Sequence record: NC_041878.1
Reading direction: 5' to 3' (one strand)
Length of the DNA: 64,000 nt
Shown: piece after piece, positions 28,548 through 60,797 of the stretch
How the letters are laid out: each line of letters starts with the position of its first letter
Position numbering within the stretch: position 1 is the first letter of the stretch
Notes under the pieces: generated by a model
What the model was told of the DNA's origin: nothing
Databases searched by the model: none
The model's input: the letters and a program-made list of their open reading frames with translations, nothing else
Position numbers and translations under genes: made by a program

Positions 28548-28671
28548 CGGGAATTGGTGTAATGGCAGCACAACGTTATAACATAGATTCTTGTATATAG
28601 GAATTTCACAGCAACCAATACAATTGCATAGGGAGCCGTGAGATGAGGTTCGATTCCTTGATTCCCGACTA
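28548..28671 (+). ncRNA. tRNA-Pro-like (AGG loop) with 50-nt ACAGCAA insert in anticodon stem
   Basis: Acceptor CGGGAAT/ATTCCCG-A, D arm, T arm GGTTCGATTCC; insert 28576-28625. Confidence 0.6.
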
Positions 28672-41994: not shown

Positions 41995-42068
41995 GCCTTT
42001 GTAGCTCAGCGGTAGAGCGGGGATCTCTAAAATCCTTTGTCGTGGGTTCGAATCCCTCCATCGGCACA
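41995..42068 (+). tRNA. tRNA with CTA anticodon (amber suppressor candidate), Phe-like body
   Basis: GGGAT-CTCTAAA-ATCCT; canonical D arm; 2 acceptor and 1 T-stem mismatches. Confidence 0.7.
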
Positions 42069-42371: not shown

Positions 42372-42483
42372 GCATAAATGACGGAATTGGTAAACGTAGA
42401 GTCTGACAATAGCGAAAGCGACGATAGGACTTCGGGAGTAGCCGTGAGGTTCCCTTGTAGGTTCGAATCCTGCTTTATGCACC
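42372..42483 (+). ncRNA. class II tRNA-like RNA with anticodon loop replaced by ~22-nt insert
   Basis: GCATAAA/TTTATGC acceptor, D and T arms intact; GC-GAAA-GC in place of anticodon. Confidence 0.6.
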
Positions 42484-47722: not shown

Positions 47723-47836
47723 GCAGTGATCGTCTAGCGGCCCAGGACACGAAAAGCGATTCTTGATTAAGAATCTTACGGCATCTATAACTTTCATTTC
47801 ACGAACGTAACGTAGGTTCGAATCCTACTCACTGCT
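47723..47836 (+). tRNA. tRNA-Glu(TTC) with 41-nt insert between nt 28 and 29
   Basis: Glu-type D arm GTCTAGCGGCCCAGGAC; CG[insert 47752-47792]TTC-ATTTCAC-GAACG. Confidence 0.65.
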
Positions 47837-47859
47837 CAAATTATAAAAGGCTTTTTAAA

Positions 47860-49423: not shown

Positions 49424-49548
49424 GGCGAGTTAGCTCAGTGGTAGAGCACGTATGAAACCCAGGATTCCTGTACTTGAATCCCGCAGCAACTATACTCTCA
49501 AGCCTTTTAAGCTCGTGGTCATTGGTTCGAATCCAATACTCGCCACCA
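49424..49548 (+). tRNA. tRNA-Lys(TTT) with 50-nt insert between nt 28 and 29
   Basis: Removing 49451-49500 leaves a 75-nt cloverleaf: CGAGC-CTTTTAA-GCTCG, ACCA. Confidence 0.75.
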
Positions 49549-53549: not shown

Positions 53550-53566
53550 ATAGTACATAAGGCAAC

Positions 53567-53687
53567 GGAATCTTACAGCAAAAATAATTAATTTTTGATG
53601 AAAACAAAACGATGGCGGTTCGAATCCCCACCCACGATTTTGCCTTATTTTAAGTGGGAGCATGGTGCTGGATAAACAAGAGATTCC
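53567..53687 (+). ncRNA. circularly permuted tRNA mimic (ACAGCAA family)
   Basis: GGAATC-TTACAGCAA, T arm, CCCAC/GTGGG closed acceptor, D-like hairpin, GATTCC. Confidence 0.7.
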
Positions 53688-53709
53688 AGATTTTAATTTA
53701 GAAAATTTT

Positions 53710-53738
53710 TGAAACGAATCAAAAATTTGTGGTATAAT
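53710..53738 (+). promoter_or_regulatory. class-B promoter
   Basis: TGAAAC-17-TATAAT. Confidence 0.8.
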
Positions 53739-53755
53739 AAACGTATTAGCAACAC

Positions 53756-53873
53756 GAAATCTTACAGCAAACAATATCTTATATTTTTTATGCGAAAAAA
53801 ACGATGTGGTTCGAATCCACAACAACCATGTTGCTATGTTGGTTGTGCATGGGGCTAGAAAACAAAAGATTTC
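53756..53873 (+). ncRNA. circularly permuted tRNA mimic (ACAGCAA family)
   Basis: GAAATCTT-ACAGCAA; TGTGG-TTCGAAT-CCACA; ACAACC/GGTTGT; AAGATTTC. Confidence 0.75.
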
Positions 53874-53907
53874 AGTTTTTTTAATTAAGACAAATAGGAC
53901 AACGGCA

Positions 53908-54142: not shown

Positions 54143-54231
54143 GGGGGAATAGTCCGTAGTTGGTAGCGGGGCAGACTGTAAATCTGCTACACGAAAGTGT
54201 TCGGGTGGTTCGACTCCATCTTCCCTCACCA
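54143..54231 (+). tRNA. tRNA-Tyr(GTA)
   Basis: GCAGA-CTGTAAA-TCTGC, long variable arm, CCA. Confidence 0.95.
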
Positions 54232-54232
54232 A

Positions 54233-54338
54233 AAGAATCGCACAGCAAACATCAATCTTATATATTTCATTTGGCGAAAACACCTTCGGTTCGATTCCGA
54301 TTTACCACTGGATGTGGGGATAGAAAAACACGATTCTT
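54233..54338 (+). ncRNA. ACAGCAA family RNA with T arm and short closed acceptor
   Basis: AAGAATCG-CACAGCAA...TCGG-TTCGATT-CCGA...CGATTCTT. Confidence 0.65.
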
Positions 54339-54376
54339 GTTTCTAATTTAGCGTGAGTTAACAGAATTTAGCACAC

Positions 54377-54660: not shown

Positions 54661-54781
54661 GGGAAAGTAGCTCAGTTGGTAGAGCACGTATAGACGATTC
54701 TTGTAGTTGAATCTTACAGCAACCATACAATTGCATATATGAAAGCACGGTGTCATTGGTTCGAATCCAGTCTTTCCCACA
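54661..54781 (+). ncRNA. tRNA (Phe-like body) with 43-nt ACAGCAA insert and 10-nt loop
   Basis: GGGAAAG/CTTTCCC, canonical D and T arms; CG[54689-54731]TGC-ATATATGAAA-GCACG. Confidence 0.65.
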
Positions 54782-54845
54782 TAGAATCTAACAGCAAACC
54801 TTATTTTATCAAACCTAACCTTTGAAGCGAAAATAATAGATTCTA
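54782..54845 (+). ncRNA. minimal ACAGCAA family RNA
   Basis: TAGAATCTA-ACAGCAA...TAGATTCTA. Confidence 0.6.
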
Positions 54846-54870
54846 GTACTTTTAATTTGAGAAATACATA

Positions 54871-56300: not shown

Positions 56301-56310
56301 ACGAATTTTC

Positions 56311-56448
56311 GGAATCTAACAGCAATTAAAAATGTTAACTAAAAAATAGCTGCCGCAAGGCTTGTAGGTTCAAGTCCTACAAATTATGTCTTCATGAATA
56401 ATGATGGTGAAAATGGTAAACACGGCTATTAACTAAACAATGGATTCC
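56311..56448 (+). ncRNA. circularly permuted class II (Leu-like) tRNA mimic, ACAGCAA family
   Basis: GGAATC-TAACAGCAA; ATAGC; CC-GCAA-GG variable arm; TGTAGG-TTCAAGT-CCTACA; D arm GGTGAAAATGGTAAACAC; GCTAT; GGATTCC. Confidence 0.8.
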
Positions 56449-56464
56449 TGTATTAATTAAACCA

Positions 56465-56560: not shown

Positions 56561-56567
56561 CAAAATT

Positions 56568-56712
56568 TGGAATTTGCCAGCAATTAACTTATTCAACGCT
56601 GCGGGTCGCAGGTTCGAGTCCTGCCAGATATGAAATGATGCTTCGTAAGATAAATCAGATTAGTACTGTAGCTCAGTTGGGAGAGCAGCAGCCCACACAA
56701 AGATGAATTCCA
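56568..56712 (+). ncRNA. circularly permuted tRNA mimic, ACAGCAA family
   Basis: TGGAATT-TGCCAGCAA; GCTGC; GCAGG-TTCGAGT-CCTGC; CAG/CTG; TAGCTCAGTTGGGAGAGC; GCAGC; GAATTCCA. Confidence 0.85.
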
Positions 56713-56725
56713 GTATTAATTAAGT

Positions 56726-56902
56726 AGGGCGGTTGTAACCAGTACTAGAATAATACTTAGGAGAGTAGTGACTCAATAGTACTAGTAGCTTTTCAGAAAT
56801 GAGAGCTTTCACGAGGCCAGCACAGTTAAGATCACAACTTAATTGTACACGTAGAGTTGGCAAAAAACGGATAAGTAGTCATTCACTGGTTAGGGTGGCC
56901 TT
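56726..56902 (+). ncRNA. candidate nested multi-helix RNA
   Basis: TAACCAGT/ACTGGTTA, GTGACT/AGTCAT, GCCAGC/GTTGGC, ACAGTTAAG/CTTAATTGT. Confidence 0.5.
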
Positions 56903-56959
56903 ATAAACTATTAATTGAGACATAAATATTCCTATACGTTTTTTAGTAAGGATATAATT

Positions 56960-57559
56960 ATGGAAATGAAAAAACTAATGGAAGATATTTCTGCCATTAT
57001 GGAAGGACAATTACCTGACTATTACTATCATGGTAGTTCTTCACCAATCACAAATTTCAGTGATGAGTTTGTTGGTAGAGGTAATGATGAATACGGTCCT
57101 GGTATATATTTTAGCTCCGTTCCTAGTACTGCAATTGGTTATGCCAAAGATGGTGCAAATGGTGTAGTATATCAGTGTCAGATAACTTTAAGAAAAGTAC
57201 TCTCAAAGAAACAAAAAATCAATAAAGCAGTACTTTTAAAGTTAATGCAAGCAACACCAGATGATGAAGCATATACTAATTGGGATGAAAACCCCAATAG
57301 AGCATATCAAAATGCATTGAATTCATATATTGATGCAGAAACTAATATGTATGATGCTTTGATGGATGTATGGTACGATTGGTATCGTTATCATGGTACT
57401 GAATTTGTACGTAATCTTGTTAAATTAGGTTATGATGGTTATATCTACGAATTTCCAAATGGAGAAAGATTTGTAGTAGTATATAATCCAGCAAGTATTA
57501 AAGTTGTAAATAGTTATTCTCCAGAAGAAGCTCTACAAACACTAGTTAAATCTAAATAA
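56960..57559 (+). CDS. ADP-ribosyltransferase-fold protein (ART-PolyVal-like)
   Basis: YHGS....F...GPGIYFS....AIGYA...LGYDGYI...VVYNP..IK. Confidence 0.6.
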   Translation: MEMKKLMEDISAIMEGQLPDYYYHGSSSPITNFSDEFVGRGNDEYGPGIYFSSVPSTAIGYAKDGANGVVYQCQITLRKVLSKKQKINKAVLLKLMQATPDDEAYTNWDENPNRAYQNALNSYIDAETNMYDALMDVWYDWYRYHGTEFVRNLVKLGYDGYIYEFPNGERFVVVYNPASIKVVNSYSPEEALQTLVKSK

Positions 57560-57593: not shown

Positions 57594-57947
57594 GTGTTTA
57601 AGACTAGATTAAAAGTTGAATTAATCAACAACGAAGGAAAGAAGTGGAAACTTATTGAAGATTTAGTTTACGAAGATGAAATGCATGGAAGAATTACTGT
57701 TCCTGCTGGATTTGAAACTGACTTTGCAAGTGTACCTAGAATACCAGTTGTGTTTGAATTGGTAGGGGATCGTGGTCATGCAGCAGCAACACTTCACGAT
57801 TGGTTGTATCATAATGATAATCTATCACGTAAAGAAGTTGATAAGATTCTACTTCAGGCTTTAAGAGATACGAATGTGGGTAAAGTTCGTTCATATTTGA
57901 TGTACTTTGGTGTACGTGGATTTGGATGGTTATTCTACATGAAATAA
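57594..57947 (+). CDS. DUF1353 family protein
   Basis: ITVPAGFETDFASVPR...AATLHDWLY. Confidence 0.85.
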   Translation: MFKTRLKVELINNEGKKWKLIEDLVYEDEMHGRITVPAGFETDFASVPRIPVVFELVGDRGHAAATLHDWLYHNDNLSRKEVDKILLQALRDTNVGKVRSYLMYFGVRGFGWLFYMK

Positions 57948-57952
57948 GAATT

Positions 57953-58210
57953 TGGAATTTAACAGCACAAAACATTTTGTCGCAGGTTCGAATCCTGCCA
58001 GAAATATTTAATTTGTAGATTACTTTATTATCATTTTCTAGATATTGATAATATTGAACATGTAACACCGTGGAGGTAACAGCTTTAGCGGGTTGTGAGA
58101 TAAACGCAGGGGTTACAATATATGTTGCAACGACCGATATGGCTAATCATAACAAATTAACTTAGTTCTGTAGCTTAGCTGGTAGAGCAAATGATAACGA
58201 ATAAATTCCA
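57953..58210 (+). ncRNA. circularly permuted tRNA mimic with 162-nt acceptor-stem insert
   Basis: TGGAATTT-AACAGCA; CATTT; GCAGG-TTCGAAT-CCTGC; CAGAA..TTCTG; TAGCTTAGCTGGTAGAGC; AAATG; AAATTCCA. Confidence 0.8.
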
Positions 58211-58245
58211 GTATTAATTAAACTAAAAAAAAAAGGTGCAATACA

Positions 58246-58680
58246 GTGGAACACGCTTTTAAAATTAACATCGGAGATTATTCTGATGATGGTCATGGTA
58301 AAAACGAAGTTATTATTGTTAAAAGTACTAAATCAGTACAAGATGTACTTAATGCGTTCATCAGTGCTGGTACTAAATTGAATGTAGTTCAACATGGTAG
58401 ATTTGTAATTGCTGAAGAATATGAAGATTCAAAGCTAAGTAATGAACATGCTGACTTCCTTCGTAATGCAGGTATCGAATTCGAAGATCTAGTTTATAAC
58501 GATGGTGACGAAGAAGAACCTGAATACATGATTAACGGCACTAATGAAATCATCCATTTAGTAATGCGTATTGCACAAACAGAATTAGACTTCGATTATC
58601 AAATTGCGAATGATACAATTCCATCATTCAATGGTTTTAGTGGAGCGGGTCCACAAATCGGATACGGTCTATTCTGGTAA
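58246..58680 (+). CDS. conserved phage hypothetical protein
   Basis: IGDYSDDGHGK...IGYGLF. Confidence 0.8.
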   Translation: MEHAFKINIGDYSDDGHGKNEVIIVKSTKSVQDVLNAFISAGTKLNVVQHGRFVIAEEYEDSKLSNEHADFLRNAGIEFEDLVYNDGDEEEPEYMINGTNEIIHLVMRIAQTELDFDYQIANDTIPSFNGFSGAGPQIGYGLFW

Positions 58681-58687
58681 TAAAATT

Positions 58688-58753
58688 TGGAATCTAGCAG
58701 CAACCATAAAATGAAATCAACTGTTAATTGAAAACCTCAAAAAATGGATTCCA
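58688..58753 (+). ncRNA. minimal ACAGCAA family RNA carrying Asn-type anticodon hairpin
   Basis: TGGAATC-TAGCAGCAA...TCAA-CTGTTAA-TTGA...GGATTCCA. Confidence 0.65.
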
Positions 58754-58760
58754 GCCTTTT

Positions 58761-59072
58761 ATGAATATAAAAGAAATTGTAGAACAAATTGAAAGTACTA
58801 TGAAAACTTCAGGTGATAATTACATGAAGGAGTTAATACTAACAAATAGGAAGAAATTACGTAACACATTCTGTGATGAATGTAATTCTTACTCCGTGTT
58901 CATGATAGTACATGATGAATTATGGAACATCATAAGTGACGGTAACTTAGATATTTTCTTATGTCCTAAATGTATGGAAAATCGATTAGGTAGAAAAATA
59001 GAAATTGCTGATTTAAAAATTTGTAATGTAAATTACCCTTACTTTTTAGCATTACAAATGATTGAAAAATAA
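58761..59072 (+). CDS. hypothetical protein with CxxC motifs
   Basis: CDEC...LCPKCMENRLGR. Confidence 0.65.
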   Translation: MNIKEIVEQIESTMKTSGDNYMKELILTNRKKLRNTFCDECNSYSVFMIVHDELWNIISDGNLDIFLCPKCMENRLGRKIEIADLKICNVNYPYFLALQMIEK

Positions 59073-59196: not shown

Positions 59197-59320
59197 AAGA
59201 ATCAAATTCACCAGGCGTACTATGGTGCAATACGGATAGCATGTTATTCTATAAGATTGGAATAGAATACGTATTAGAACCTTGTAAAGTTCTTCTGTAA
59301 ACTCAATTTGATACCTTCTT

Positions 59321-59387
59321 TAGAATCTAACAGCAAACACATTTAAACATATATTTTTGGGATATAAAACGTTAAAAACGGATTCTA
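59321..59387 (+). ncRNA. minimal ACAGCAA family RNA
   Basis: TAGAATC-TAACAGCAA...TATAT-TTTTGGG-ATATA...GATTCTA. Confidence 0.6.
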
Positions 59388-59417
59388 GTCTTATTAAAAG
59401 CAATCGAGAATATTTAC

Positions 59418-59648: not shown

Positions 59649-59653
59649 AAATT

Positions 59654-59709
59654 TAGAATCTAACAGCAATTAAAACTCATTTGGATAATATGAAAACCGA
59701 TAGATTCTA
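59654..59709 (+). ncRNA. minimal ACAGCAA family RNA (near-identical to 60718-60772)
   Basis: TAGAATCTAACAGCAATTAAAACTCATTTGGATAATATGAAAA...TAGATTCTA. Confidence 0.65.
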
Positions 59710-59715
59710 GTCTTT

Positions 59716-59790
59716 AGGCGTATAGTGTAATTGGTTAGCACACCAGGTTTTGATCCTGGTAATCGAGGTTCAAGTCCTTGTATGCCTGCA
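59716..59790 (+). tRNA. tRNA-Gln(TTG)
   Basis: CCAGG-TTTTGAT-CCTGG; CGAGG-TTCAAGT-CCTTG. Confidence 0.9.
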
Positions 59791-60710: not shown

Positions 60711-60717
60711 CAGAATT

Positions 60718-60772
60718 TAGAATCTAACAGCAATTAAACTCATTTGGATAATATGAAAAACAATAGATTCTA
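60718..60772 (+). ncRNA. minimal ACAGCAA family RNA
   Basis: Direct repeat of 59654-59709. Confidence 0.65.
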
Positions 60773-60797
60773 GTACTTTTTTAGCTAAGAGACAAAT

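What the first reader, a model, noticed from the sequence alone, without database searches (positions are those of the whole stretch)
57953..58210. Permuted tRNA whose closed acceptor stem carries a 162-nt cargo domain
Seen: after the T arm, CAGAA (57999-58003) pairs with TTCTG (58166-58170), followed by the D arm. The 162 nt between them include further hairpins (e.g. TGTAAC/GTTACA, GCG-CGC). Inference: the tRNA/module scaffold may display an effector RNA, as engineered tRNA scaffolds do.
Basis: partly seen in the sequence, partly recalled or inferred. Interest (0 to 1): 0.68.

Follow-up and report, generated by a model that had tools for sequence, protein, structure and literature searches.

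The report
Phage tRNA mimic with 162-nt insert
This stretch of a giant Pectobacterium phage encodes a small RNA shaped like a tRNA written in rearranged order, of the bacterial "Y RNA-like" type. The 162 extra bases at its tip are a recent addition found only in this phage's closest relatives, not a conserved feature of the RNA family.

Summary
At 57949-58222 (+) of phage vB_PcaM_CBB the order is: a conserved clamp (GGAATTT/AAATTCC plus AACAGCA), a T arm, an acceptor-like stem (CAGAA/TTCTG) and a D arm. A 162-nt segment lies between the two acceptor strands.

This order is the YrlA (Y RNA-like) architecture. Compact orthologs in about 12 related phages hit Rfam YrlA at 37-45 bits, below the curated cut-off of 69. 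They show strong covariation: 96% of cells paired, and 14 pairs with changes on both sides against 6 in shuffles. In all of them the acceptor-like hairpin is 7 bp with a 2-6 nt loop.

The 162-nt "cargo" exists only in CBB, in one ENA contig (L109) and in CBB-like phages in four sequencing runs. It matches nothing else. Its fold is only marginally better than shuffled sequence (z -1.7).

Within that sub-lineage it is kept. Its two arms (116 nt) are identical between CBB and L109, while the neighbouring gene differs at 5.6% of bases. A metatranscriptome contig joins it to the T arm at about 10 times the depth of the flanks.

No Ro60/TROVE gene was found in this phage clade.

My reading: a real tRNA-mimic RNA with a lineage-specific expansion of its apical loop. 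An effector role for the insert is unproven. The scan has already reported this module family on other windows and phages.

The parts
57949..57953 (+). Conserved AATTT leader that precedes the clamp in nearly all modules
   Evidence: Alignments. RNA-library contig record 12 starts about here.
57954..57960 (+). Clamp (closing stem), 5' strand GGAATTT
   Evidence: Pairs with 58203-58209 (I3). The last two pairs co-vary across orthologs.
57961..57967 (+). Conserved unpaired motif AACAGCA (the 'handle')
   Evidence: C15-A19 (CAGCA) is invariant and the two A's before it nearly so in alignment A1. The motif recurs 11-13 times, on the + strand only, in the tRNA region.
57973..57977 (+). Anticodon-stem-like helix, first strand (CATTT). 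Pairs with 58189-58193 (AAATG).
   Evidence: Read from the sequence. All 5 pairs of the homologous helix change on both sides among orthologs (helix 2).
57978..57981 (+). Variable-loop-like TGTC. The final C could form the Levitt pair with G15 of the D loop (58178).
   Evidence: GTC is invariant in A1. The Levitt pairing is inferred by analogy with tRNA and YrlA (PMC4201824).
57982..57998 (+). T arm: GCAGG TTCGAAT CCTGC
   Evidence: Helix 3 is 98% paired and two of its pairs change on both sides.
57999..58005 (+). Acceptor-like stem, 3'-type strand CAGAAAT
   Evidence: Pairs with 58164-58170 at 6 of 7 positions. The ortholog hairpin occurs as four different complementary sequences.
58004..58165 (+). 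The 162-nt lineage-specific insert ('cargo'). It replaces the 2-6 nt loop of the orthologs.
   Evidence: Alignments A1 and A3. Present only in CBB, L109 and runs X1, X2, X7 and X14. No match elsewhere.
58008..58022 (+). 5' arm of the extended helix: TTAATTTGT (9 bp with 58152-58160), then GATTA (5 bp with 58144-58148)
   Evidence: I4. Invariant between CBB and L109.
58026..58053 (+). Hairpin H1 of the insert (8-bp stem, 12-nt loop)
   Evidence: (I2). The one change in L109 (58048 A to G) turns U-A into U-G.
58048..58093 (+). Variable centre of the insert. All 8 CBB/L109 differences within the insert fall here.
   Evidence: the 58050-58099 window is 86% identical, against 100% for the arms.
58061..58117 (+). 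Hairpin H2 (TGTAAC/GTTACA), predicted to enclose two small hairpins
   Evidence: I5; alifold. This is a predicted fold only.
58144..58160 (+). 3' arm of the extended helix (TAATC ... ACAAATTAA)
58164..58170 (+). Acceptor-like stem, 5'-type strand AGTTCTG
   Evidence: In L109, 58166 is T to A, which weakens the stem.
58171..58188 (+). TA (U8/A9-like), then the D arm GCTT AGCTGGTA GAGC, with G18 and G19 present
   Evidence: The D stem and loop are invariant or nearly so in orthologs.
58189..58193 (+). Anticodon-stem-like helix, second strand AAATG
   Evidence: pairs with 57973-57977.
58203..58209 (+). Clamp, 3' strand AAATTCC
58210..58222 (+). Conserved trailer AGTATTAATTAAA
56564..56726 (+). 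Paralog 'B': the same architecture, with a 38-nt extended acceptor-like hairpin
   Evidence: R2 111 bits. Rfam YrlA 31 bits. Its loop is conserved in L090 and L109.
56306..56463 (+). Paralog 'A': the same clamp and T arm, with a variable-arm-like hairpin and a divergent D arm
   Evidence: R1 43 bits and R2 39.5 bits; sequence.

Best explanation
The locus encodes a non-coding RNA of the YrlA (Y RNA-like) architecture. It has a tRNA 'top half' (T arm, acceptor-like hairpin, D arm, all elbow-forming nucleotides). Its ends are held not at the acceptor stem but at a conserved clamp: a 7-9 bp helix plus the unpaired motif AACAGCA, which takes the place of the anticodon arm. It is one of three such paralogs among about 13 clamp-bearing modules in the tRNA region of phage CBB.

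In every ortholog outside the CBB sub-lineage the acceptor-like hairpin is 7 bp capped by 2-6 nt. In CBB and its nearest kin that cap has been replaced by 162 nt. The two ends of this segment prolong the hairpin as an irregular helix of about 21 bp, and its middle can form two or three small hairpins.

The RNA most likely works as a stable tRNA look-alike. The elbow would engage tRNA-recognising factors, and the clamp would engage an unidentified partner. These phages have no Ro60 gene of their own. The 162 nt are an expansion segment at the tip that points away from both functional surfaces.

Shown: the architecture, its conservation and covariation, and the lineage restriction and within-lineage retention of the insert. 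Inferred: that the whole element is one RNA, its partners, and whether the insert does anything.
For: **Identity and context**
- The window is CBB 248001-312000.
- GAP32, BF, pEa12, Yen9-03/04, XbC2, Kaldavass, XaC1 and the Logan/ENA contigs L090, L091, L097, L100 and L110 carry the compact form at this position.

**Fold and family**
- Rfam YrlA, full model: 44.7 bits, E 6e-9 in GAP32; 37.6-41.6 bits in L090, L110 and XaC1, plus a partial 40.3-bit match in BF.
- Structure on 11 compact orthologs: 96.1% of cells paired, 14 pairs with changes on both sides against 6.2 in shuffles (0 of 500 shuffles reach it), and 37-44% paired when the partner is slid.
- The acceptor-like hairpin occurs as four different complementary 7-mers.
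- The T-AS-D order is the one described for YrlA (PMC4201824).
- Model R2, built without CBB sequences, finds paralog B at 111 bits and both halves of this locus. R1 finds 13 modules, all on the + strand, within about 25 kb.

**The insert**
- It is absent from L090, L097 and L110, the closest compact relatives (L110's DUF1353 protein differs by 2 residues and L090/L097 share the downstream gp522 gene). It is present in L109.
- CBB against L109: tRNA-like core 111/112 identical; insert 154/162 with both arms invariant; gp523 94.4%; gp524 72%; gp522 61%.
- Runs from four studies hold the insert. An RNA-library contig spans 57949-58130 at depth about 135-148, against 0-13 in the flanks.
Against: - Every Rfam YrlA score is below the curated cut-off of 69. 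This locus itself scores only 16 bits, over part of the model.
- No TROVE/Ro60 gene was found in CBB or in five relatives, so the defining partner of Y RNAs is missing from these phages.
- The YrlA motif GNCGAAN0-1G is not present in the clamp.
- CBB's copy looks eroded compared with the orthologs. It has a 12-nt shorter internal loop, an A/U-rich 5-bp anticodon-like helix that competes with a local hairpin in the MFE fold, a G-U pair in the D stem, and a mismatch in the acceptor stem that grows to two in L109.
- The RNA evidence comes from assembled contigs of one metatranscriptome. Contigs cannot show ends or strand. Nothing was laid on 58155-58228.
- The MFE z-score of the whole element is only -1.38.
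Confidence: 0.7

Rival explanations
1. One reading: the tRNA-like module is a scaffold, and the 162 nt are a functional effector domain (aptamer, antisense or protein-binding) displayed at the tip of the acceptor arm.
For: - The two arms of the insert (116 nt) are identical in CBB and L109, although the adjacent gene differs at 5.6% of sites. About 6.5 changes would be expected, Poisson P about 0.0015 (my own estimate).
- All four substitutions that fall in predicted stems keep the pair (U-A to U-G, C-G to U-G, G-U to G-C, U-G to C-G).
- The ends of the insert form a 9+5 bp helix in register with the acceptor stem.
- An RNA-library contig joins the T arm to 125 nt of the insert at high depth.
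- Paralog B also carries a 38-nt extended hairpin, conserved in three lineages.
Against: - The insert is absent from all 11 compact orthologs and from the closest relatives L090, L097 and L110.
- It has no Rfam hit and no homolog in any collection searched.
- Fold z-score is -1.74, and 10 of 200 shuffles fold as well.
- The phage genome holds no complementary stretch longer than 13 nt.
- Only two alleles were readable, with no compensatory double change, and the consensus fold was derived from those same two sequences.
- The invariant arms could equally reflect a recent recombination tract.
Confidence: 0.2
2. The 162 nt are a spacer that is cut out. RNase P cleaves 5' of the acceptor 5'-type strand and 3' processing trims the trailer. 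This would give a two-piece, clamp-held tRNA mimic, as in permuted tmRNA genes and in M. smegmatis YrlA. Loop length would then be irrelevant.
For: - A 7-bp acceptor-like stem stacked on a T arm is the RNase P determinant. M. smegmatis YrlA, which has a 7-bp stem, is cleaved by RNase P and gains CCA (PMC4201824).
- Loop length is very free in CBB: 38 nt and 162 nt, against 2-6 nt elsewhere.
Against: - The RNA-library contig runs uninterrupted from the T arm through 125 nt of the insert.
- No CCA is encoded.
- The helix continues beyond the 7 bp, which disfavours RNase P.
- The arms of the insert and the 38-nt loop of paralog B are conserved, which is unexpected for a discarded spacer.
Confidence: 0.08
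3. A true circularly permuted tRNA gene (Cyanidioschyzon type). Its transcript would be circularised at the clamp and opened at the acceptor end to yield a decoding tRNA.
For: - The 3' half lies upstream of the 5' half, and leader and trailer pair with each other.
- The same clamp sequences, in reverse order, interrupt four long tRNA genes of this phage.
- The phage encodes two RNA ligases (PMC5259590).
Against: - No anticodon loop is conserved. The seven bases after the anticodon-like stem differ between orthologs and would give different anticodons.
- The clamp and its AACAGCA motif are themselves the most conserved part.
- No CCA is encoded, and no bulge-helix-bulge motif or splicing endonuclease is known in these phages (not tested here).
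- ARAGORN does not call it as a tRNA.
Confidence: 0.03
4. Not an RNA gene. Either decayed halves of two neighbouring tRNA genes, or a DNA-level repeat cassette (recombination or regulatory cassette, like the PeSL elements of T4-type phages) that happens to include tRNA fragments.
For: - The modules sit between almost every small gene in a mosaic, plastic region.
- Chen et al. warn that dimeric tRNAs can mimic YrlA.
- CBB's copy is somewhat eroded.
Against: - Compensatory changes occur in all helices except the invariant D stem.
- The other tRNA halves are not on either side.
- The modules are strictly on the + strand.
- The tRNA-like core is 111/112 identical between phages whose flanking genes are 61-72% identical.
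- Depth jumps sharply in an RNA library.
Confidence: 0.04

Closest known systems
YrlA (Y RNA-like A; Rfam RF02553), the tRNA-mimicking Y RNA of bacteria and some phages (Chen et al. 2014, PMC4201824)
   Same: - The same order: T arm, closed acceptor-like stem-loop, D arm.
- The RNA ends are closed by a separate lower helix.
- tRNA elbow nucleotides and a possible Levitt pair are present.
- Compact orthologs match the full Rfam model at E 1e-5 to 6e-9.
- Acceptor-stem length is known to vary in YrlA.
   Different: - Scores are below the curated cut-off.
- No Ro60/TROVE gene was found in the phage or its relatives.
- The lower module carries AACAGCA next to a GGAATY helix instead of GNCGAAN0-1G.
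- The elements occur in multiple copies scattered among tRNA genes.
- This copy has a 162-nt apical insert.
Circularly permuted tRNA genes of Cyanidioschyzon merolae and some other algae and archaea (own knowledge: Soma et al. 2007)
   Same: The gene order is 3' half, intervening sequence, 5' half. Leader and trailer pair with each other.
   Different: - Those genes give decoding tRNAs through a circular intermediate made by the splicing endonuclease at a bulge-helix-bulge motif.
- Here no anticodon loop is conserved, the paired ends are a conserved clamp, and no such enzyme is known in these phages.
Two-piece (permuted) tmRNA genes (own knowledge)
   Same: T arm and 3' acceptor strand lie upstream of the 5' acceptor strand, with an intervening segment between them.
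   Different: - No tag reading frame, no pseudoknots and no encoded CCA.
- ARAGORN finds no tmRNA.
- Rfam tmRNA matches only the T arm, at 7 bits.
Engineered tRNA scaffolds for RNA expression (own knowledge: Ponchon and Dardel 2007)
   Same: A tRNA body that carries a foreign RNA segment and could stabilise it.
   Different: The engineered cargo replaces the anticodon stem-loop and the acceptor end stays open. Here the insert sits in the closed acceptor tip, and the anticodon side is the clamp.
The clamp ('handle') module family already reported by this scan in CBB and other jumbo phages (s1-156121, s1-161108, s1-160423, s1-156475)
   Same: The same clamp, the same region and the same T-AS-D design. 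This locus is a further copy.
   Different: It is the only copy with a three-digit insert in the acceptor-like hairpin. Paralog B has 38 nt.

Membership tests
YrlA / Y RNA-like (RF02553) | T arm, closed acceptor-like stem-loop and D arm, in that order, with the ends closed by a lower helix | tested here: met
   Sequence. Structure counts on orthologs. Description in PMC4201824.
YrlA / Y RNA-like (RF02553) | Score at or above Rfam's gathering threshold (69 bits) | tested here: not met
   This locus scores 16.3 bits over part of the model. Paralog B scores 31.4. Compact orthologs score 37.6-44.7.
YrlA / Y RNA-like (RF02553) | Encoded next to a Ro60 (Rsr, TROVE) gene | tested here: not met
   PF05731 was found in none of CBB, GAP32, BF, Yen9-03, XbC2 and XaC1. 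In one unrelated phage that has TROVE, three such RNAs lie directly upstream of it. Whether the host has Rsr could not be tested.
YrlA / Y RNA-like (RF02553) | Ro60-binding motif GNCGAAN0-1G on the 5' strand of the lower module | tested here: not met
   The 5' strand reads GGAATTT-AACAGCA. The lower part aligns poorly to the Rfam model.
YrlA / Y RNA-like (RF02553) | tRNA tertiary-contact nucleotides (U8, A14, G15-C48, G18, G19, T-loop TTCRANY) | tested here: met
   Read from the sequence. These positions are invariant in A1 and A4. Formation of the contacts is inferred.
Permuted tRNA gene (functional tRNA via circular intermediate) | 3' half upstream of 5' half, with pairing leader and trailer | tested here: met
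Permuted tRNA gene (functional tRNA via circular intermediate) | A conserved anticodon stem-loop is restored after joining of the ends | tested here: not met
   The bases following the anticodon-like helix differ among orthologs and would give different anticodons. The clamp is what is conserved.
Permuted tRNA gene (functional tRNA via circular intermediate) | Circular RNA intermediate; aminoacylated product | not testable with these tools
   Needs RNA-seq with junction reads, or Northern blots. The run data here are contigs.
Two-piece tmRNA | Tag reading frame, pseudoknots and encoded CCA | tested here: not met
   ARAGORN finds no tmRNA. The Rfam tmRNA match is 7.3 bits, on the T arm only. 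No CCA follows 58005.
Jumbo-phage clamp ('handle') module family (this scan) | GGAATY/RATTCC-type helix with co-varying inner pairs, AACAGCA after the 5' strand, AGTATTAAT after the 3' strand, + strand, in the tRNA region | tested here: met

The most novel reading that the evidence does not exclude
A natural 'tRNA-scaffold' RNA. A phage Y-RNA-like tRNA mimic has acquired, in one sub-lineage, a 162-nt structured domain at the tip of its closed acceptor arm. The domain is expressed as part of the RNA and kept by selection. It has invariant helical arms and a fast-changing 46-nt centre (58048-58093) that could be a specificity-determining or target-binding part.
Probability: 0.2. Interest if true: 0.7.

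Novelty: new variant of a known kind. Interest (0 to 1): 0.45.

Why it matters
Y RNA-like tRNA mimics are known as partners of Ro60. Their occurrence in multiple copies in jumbo phages that have no Ro60 gene, with a different conserved clamp, points to an unidentified partner and to an unexplored phage use of tRNA look-alikes.

This copy shows that the closed acceptor tip tolerates, and within a lineage retains, a 162-nt addition. That is a ready-made natural experiment on which parts of the mimic matter. It also gives a handle for Northern blots and pull-downs: a unique sequence that distinguishes this RNA from its paralogs and from tRNAs.

If the insert proves functional, it would be a natural counterpart of engineered tRNA scaffolds.

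Tried and rejected
**Searches for relatives of the 162 nt: nothing beyond CBB itself**
- blastn against phages and plasmids.
- blastn-short against the phage's own genome: best other match 18 nt.
- Exact-word scans of IMG/VR, JGI metagenomes and GTDB genomes.

**Known families and signals: nothing**
- Rfam at E up to 10 over 57800-58400 gave only chance-level hits: porB 20 bits, RAGATH-35 17.5 bits.
- No sigma-70-like promoter on the + strand and no terminator inside the insert.
- The only + strand ORF in the insert (31 aa, GTG start, 58070-58165) has no ribosome-binding site. Rejected as a gene.

**Features judged to be chance or coincidence**
- The 21-nt, 76% complementarity between 58019-39 and 58186-206 (I1) is about what chance gives in this AT-rich stretch. 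That is my estimate.
- The TAACAGC inside the insert (58077-83) resembles the clamp motif, but it is changed in L109.

**Ro60 link (lead from earlier scan notes)**
- TROVE is absent from 6 of 6 genomes of this clade and from 3 of 4 other complete phage genomes with model hits.
- It is adjacent to the RNAs in the one genome that has it.
- This does not show that the GGAATY-AACAGCA clamp binds Ro60.

**Steps that could not be done or gave nothing useful**
- Host Rsr could not be checked. The genome-contig scan with the phage TROVE protein found only Clostridia.
- IMG/VR relatives of the DUF1353 gene (L010, L011) have a different gene order and no element after it.
- The supplementary tables of Chen et al. 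are not held.

Full report
**Where we are.** The window is Pectobacterium phage vB_PcaM_CBB (NC_041878), bases 248001-312000. CBB is a 378-kb Rak2-like jumbo phage. The finding lies in the 298-nt gap between gp523 (DUF1353, ends at 57947) and gp522 (starts at 58246). This is inside the tRNA-rich early region: 21 tRNAs by ARAGORN and 23 by Rfam.

Reading the sequence gives these parts.
- A T arm at 57982-57998 (GCAGG TTCGAAT CCTGC).
- CAGAA at 57999-58003, pairing with TTCTG at 58166-58170. As a 7-bp stem, 57999-58005 with 58164-58170, six of seven positions pair.
- TA, then a D arm at 58173-58188 (GCTT AGCTGGTA GAGC).
- Outside these, CATTT (57973-77) pairs with AAATG (58189-93). This is an anticodon-stem-like helix.
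- The very ends pair as TGGAATTTA/TAAATTCCA (57953-61 with 58202-10).
- The 162 nt between the acceptor strands begin and end with a 9-bp perfect inverted repeat in register with the acceptor stem (58008-16 with 58152-60), then 5 more pairs (58018-22 with 58144-48).

**What the element is.** The orthologous gap in GAP32 and Serratia phage BF holds the same element in a compact form. There the acceptor-like stem is a 7-bp hairpin closed by a tetraloop.
- The GAP32 copy matches the whole Rfam YrlA (Y RNA-like) model at 44.7 bits, E 6e-9.
- Copies in L090, L110 and XaC1 score 37.6-41.6 bits over the whole model, and BF scores 40.3 bits over part of it. All are below Rfam's cut-off of 69.
- YrlA was described by Chen et al. 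2014 with this order: T stem-loop, 'AS' stem-loop in the place of the acceptor stem, D stem-loop. It carries tRNA tertiary-contact nucleotides and its ends are closed by a Ro60-binding lower helix (PMC4201824).

**Covariation.** I collected 11 compact orthologs: GAP32, BF, Yen9-03, XbC2, Kaldavass, XaC1 and the Logan/ENA contigs L090, L091, L097, L100 and L110.
- On the five-helix structure, 96.1% of cells pair.
- 14 of 28 pairs change on both sides, against 6.2 in shuffles (0 of 500 shuffles reach it).
- Sliding the partner by 1-3 columns drops pairing to 25-44%.
- The acceptor-like hairpin exists as four different complementary 7-mers.
- U8, A14, G15, G18, G19, the T-loop and the C that could pair with G15 are invariant.
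- A model built from these orthologs alone finds CBB's paralog at 56564-56726 at 111 bits. It finds this locus as two halves (30.9 and 32.8 bits), split by the insert.

**The wider family.** The clamp is a GGAATY/RATTCC-type helix with co-varying inner pairs. AACAGCA follows the 5' strand and AGTATTAAT follows the 3' strand.
- It recurs about 13 times in CBB, always on the + strand, within about 25 kb of the tRNA region.
- Its loop holds either nothing much, or a T arm plus hairpin, or the full T-AS-D set. The full set occurs three times: 56306-56463, 56564-56726 and this locus.
- In reverse order, the two clamp halves sit inside the anticodon region of four unusually long tRNA genes.
- This scan has already described the family on other windows and other phages. 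My finding is one more copy, and I did not re-derive the family-level claims beyond the tests named here.

**Ro60.** Earlier notes link the module to Ro60-like genes. Using Pfam TROVE (PF05731), I found the following.
- No match in CBB, GAP32, BF, Yen9-03, XbC2 or XaC1.
- No match in three of four other complete phage genomes that hold matches to my model.
- In the one genome that has TROVE, a Clostridia-type phage, three T-AS-D RNAs lie directly upstream of the gene. This is the classical rsr-yrlA arrangement.
- The RNA type is therefore a Ro60 partner in some phages. In this clade the phage brings no Ro60, and the YrlA motif GNCGAAN0-1G is replaced by AACAGCA. The clamp's partner here is unknown. 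Whether the host has Rsr could not be tested.

**The 162-nt insert.**
- *Distribution.* All compact orthologs have a 2-6 nt loop. The insert occurs in CBB and in ENA contig L109. It also occurs in CBB-like phages in four runs from four studies. One of these is a 4.7-kb contig spanning the whole stretch with 43 differences. The closest compact relatives L090, L097 and L110 lack it (L110's DUF1353 protein differs by 2 residues and L090/L097 share the downstream gp522 gene). It is therefore a derived feature of one sub-lineage.
- *Origin.* Nothing similar was found in phages, plasmids, IMG/VR, JGI metagenomes, GTDB genomes or elsewhere in CBB. There is no Rfam hit, no credible ORF and no promoter or terminator.
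- *Fold.* MFE is -31.9 kcal/mol against -26.2 for shuffles, z -1.74, and 10 of 200 shuffles fold as well.
- *Conservation within the sub-lineage.* CBB and L109 are mosaic: gp524 is 72% identical and gp522 61%. The block gp523 plus element is 94-100% identical. Within it, gp523 is 94.4%, the tRNA-like core 111/112 and the insert 154/162.
- *Pattern of change.* All eight differences in the insert lie in 58048-58093. The arms (58004-47 and 58094-165, 116 nt) are invariant. At the rate seen in gp523 one would expect about 6.5 changes in the arms, so they look constrained. Alternatively they lie in a recent recombination tract.
- *Effect on pairing.* Four of the eight changes fall in stems of the two-sequence consensus fold and all keep the pair, each by a one-sided change. 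None is a double compensatory change, and the fold was derived from these same sequences. This is weak support only.
- *Acceptor stem.* A ninth difference (58166 T to A) weakens the acceptor stem in L109.
- *RNA evidence.* In a food-fermentation metatranscriptome, one 181-nt contig covers 57949-58130 at depth about 135 and a second allele covers 57881-58130 at depth 13. The flanking genes lie at 0-13. This suggests an abundant RNA that starts at the clamp and runs through the T arm into the insert. Contigs cannot prove ends, strand or level, and nothing was laid on 58155-58228.

**An erosion caveat.** Compared with the orthologs, CBB's copy has a 12-nt shorter lower internal loop, an A/U-rich anticodon-like helix, a G-U pair in the D stem and a mismatched acceptor stem. 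Paralog B also has an expanded hairpin (38 nt), which is almost invariant in CBB, L090 and L109 while its internal loops vary. Long acceptor-tip extensions can therefore be stably kept in this family.

**How it most likely works.**
- Shown: the fold class, its conservation, and the lineage restriction and local retention of the insert.
- Inferred: the RNA is a stable tRNA look-alike whose elbow engages tRNA-recognising factors. [quoted passage not shown] Its clamp binds an unidentified phage or host protein. The insert is an expansion segment at the tip, pointing away from both surfaces.
- Rivals: a functional displayed domain (0.2), an excised spacer giving a two-piece RNA (0.08), a real permuted tRNA gene (0.03), and a non-RNA repeat or decayed tRNA halves (0.04). 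Their tests are in the rival section.

**Verdict.** The 'permuted tRNA' is a YrlA-type tRNA mimic of a phage family already seen by this scan. The 'cargo' is a sub-lineage-specific insert, retained and probably transcribed, with no demonstrated effector role. I class it as a new variant of a known kind, of moderate interest.

Noticed in passing
window 28548-28669, 47723-47837, 49424-49548, 54661-54780: Four long tRNA genes (114-125 nt). In each, the two clamp halves sit in reverse order (GATTC-loop-GAATC, then ACAGCAA-like) inside the anticodon region. ARAGORN -i calls them intron tRNAs, with unreliable anticodons. Orthologs in XbC2 and Kaldavass are annotated tRNA-Lys(TTT), 122 nt.
   Followed up: partly
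window 42372-42483: Another long tRNA-like gene (112 nt; Rfam tRNA 37 bits). Its insert lacks the clamp motif.
   Followed up: no
window 54778-54859, 58684-58767, 59317-59401, 59650-59723, 60714-60786: 'Empty' clamp modules of about 70-85 nt between genes and directly before tRNA-Gln. They fall into two conserved loop classes, one with ...CTCATTTGGATAATATGAAAA... and one with ...AACCATAAAATGAAATCAACTGTTAATTGAAAA...
   Followed up: partly
window 53562-53888 and 54229-54340: Clamp modules that hold a T arm and a 7-bp hairpin but no canonical D arm. Some are preceded by TGnTATAAT-type promoters.
   Followed up: no
window 56564-56726: Paralog B carries a 38-nt extended acceptor-like hairpin. It is nearly invariant in CBB, L090 and L109, while the internal loops of the same RNA vary.
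   Followed up: partly
window 56915-57559 (gp524): Homologs of this hypothetical protein carry the Pfam ART-PolyVal (PF18760) ADP-ribosyltransferase domain in the collection's precomputed hits. It is only 72% identical between CBB and L109.
   Followed up: no
window 41995-42067: tRNA with anticodon CTA. ARAGORN labels it tRNA-Pyl. It is an amber-suppressor candidate.
   Followed up: no
window 57594-58606 against L109: Sharp mosaic boundaries. gp523 plus the RNA element are 94-100% identical between CBB and L109. The genes on either side are 72% and 61% identical, which suggests that the RNA travels with gp523 as a unit.
   Followed up: partly
Enterococcus phages (e.g. NC_048087 45116-45174); About 23 Enterococcus phages match the T arm-hairpin-D arm part of the GAP32 element at about 80% over 59 nt, in unannotated DNA. 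These may be further YrlA-type RNAs or adjacent tRNA halves.
   Followed up: no
L228 2571-3002 (-), IMG/VR contig 3300017917_002918: Three tandem T-AS-D RNAs lie directly upstream of a 551-aa TROVE (Ro60-like) gene in a 167-kb phage whose TROVE protein is closest to Clostridia. Only the middle one carries ACAGCAA.
   Followed up: partly
L120, L157, L184, L174, L188, L173, L154, L156: Full-length matches to the phage T-AS-D model (50-84 bits) in diverse large viral contigs. No TROVE gene was found in those records.
   Followed up: partly
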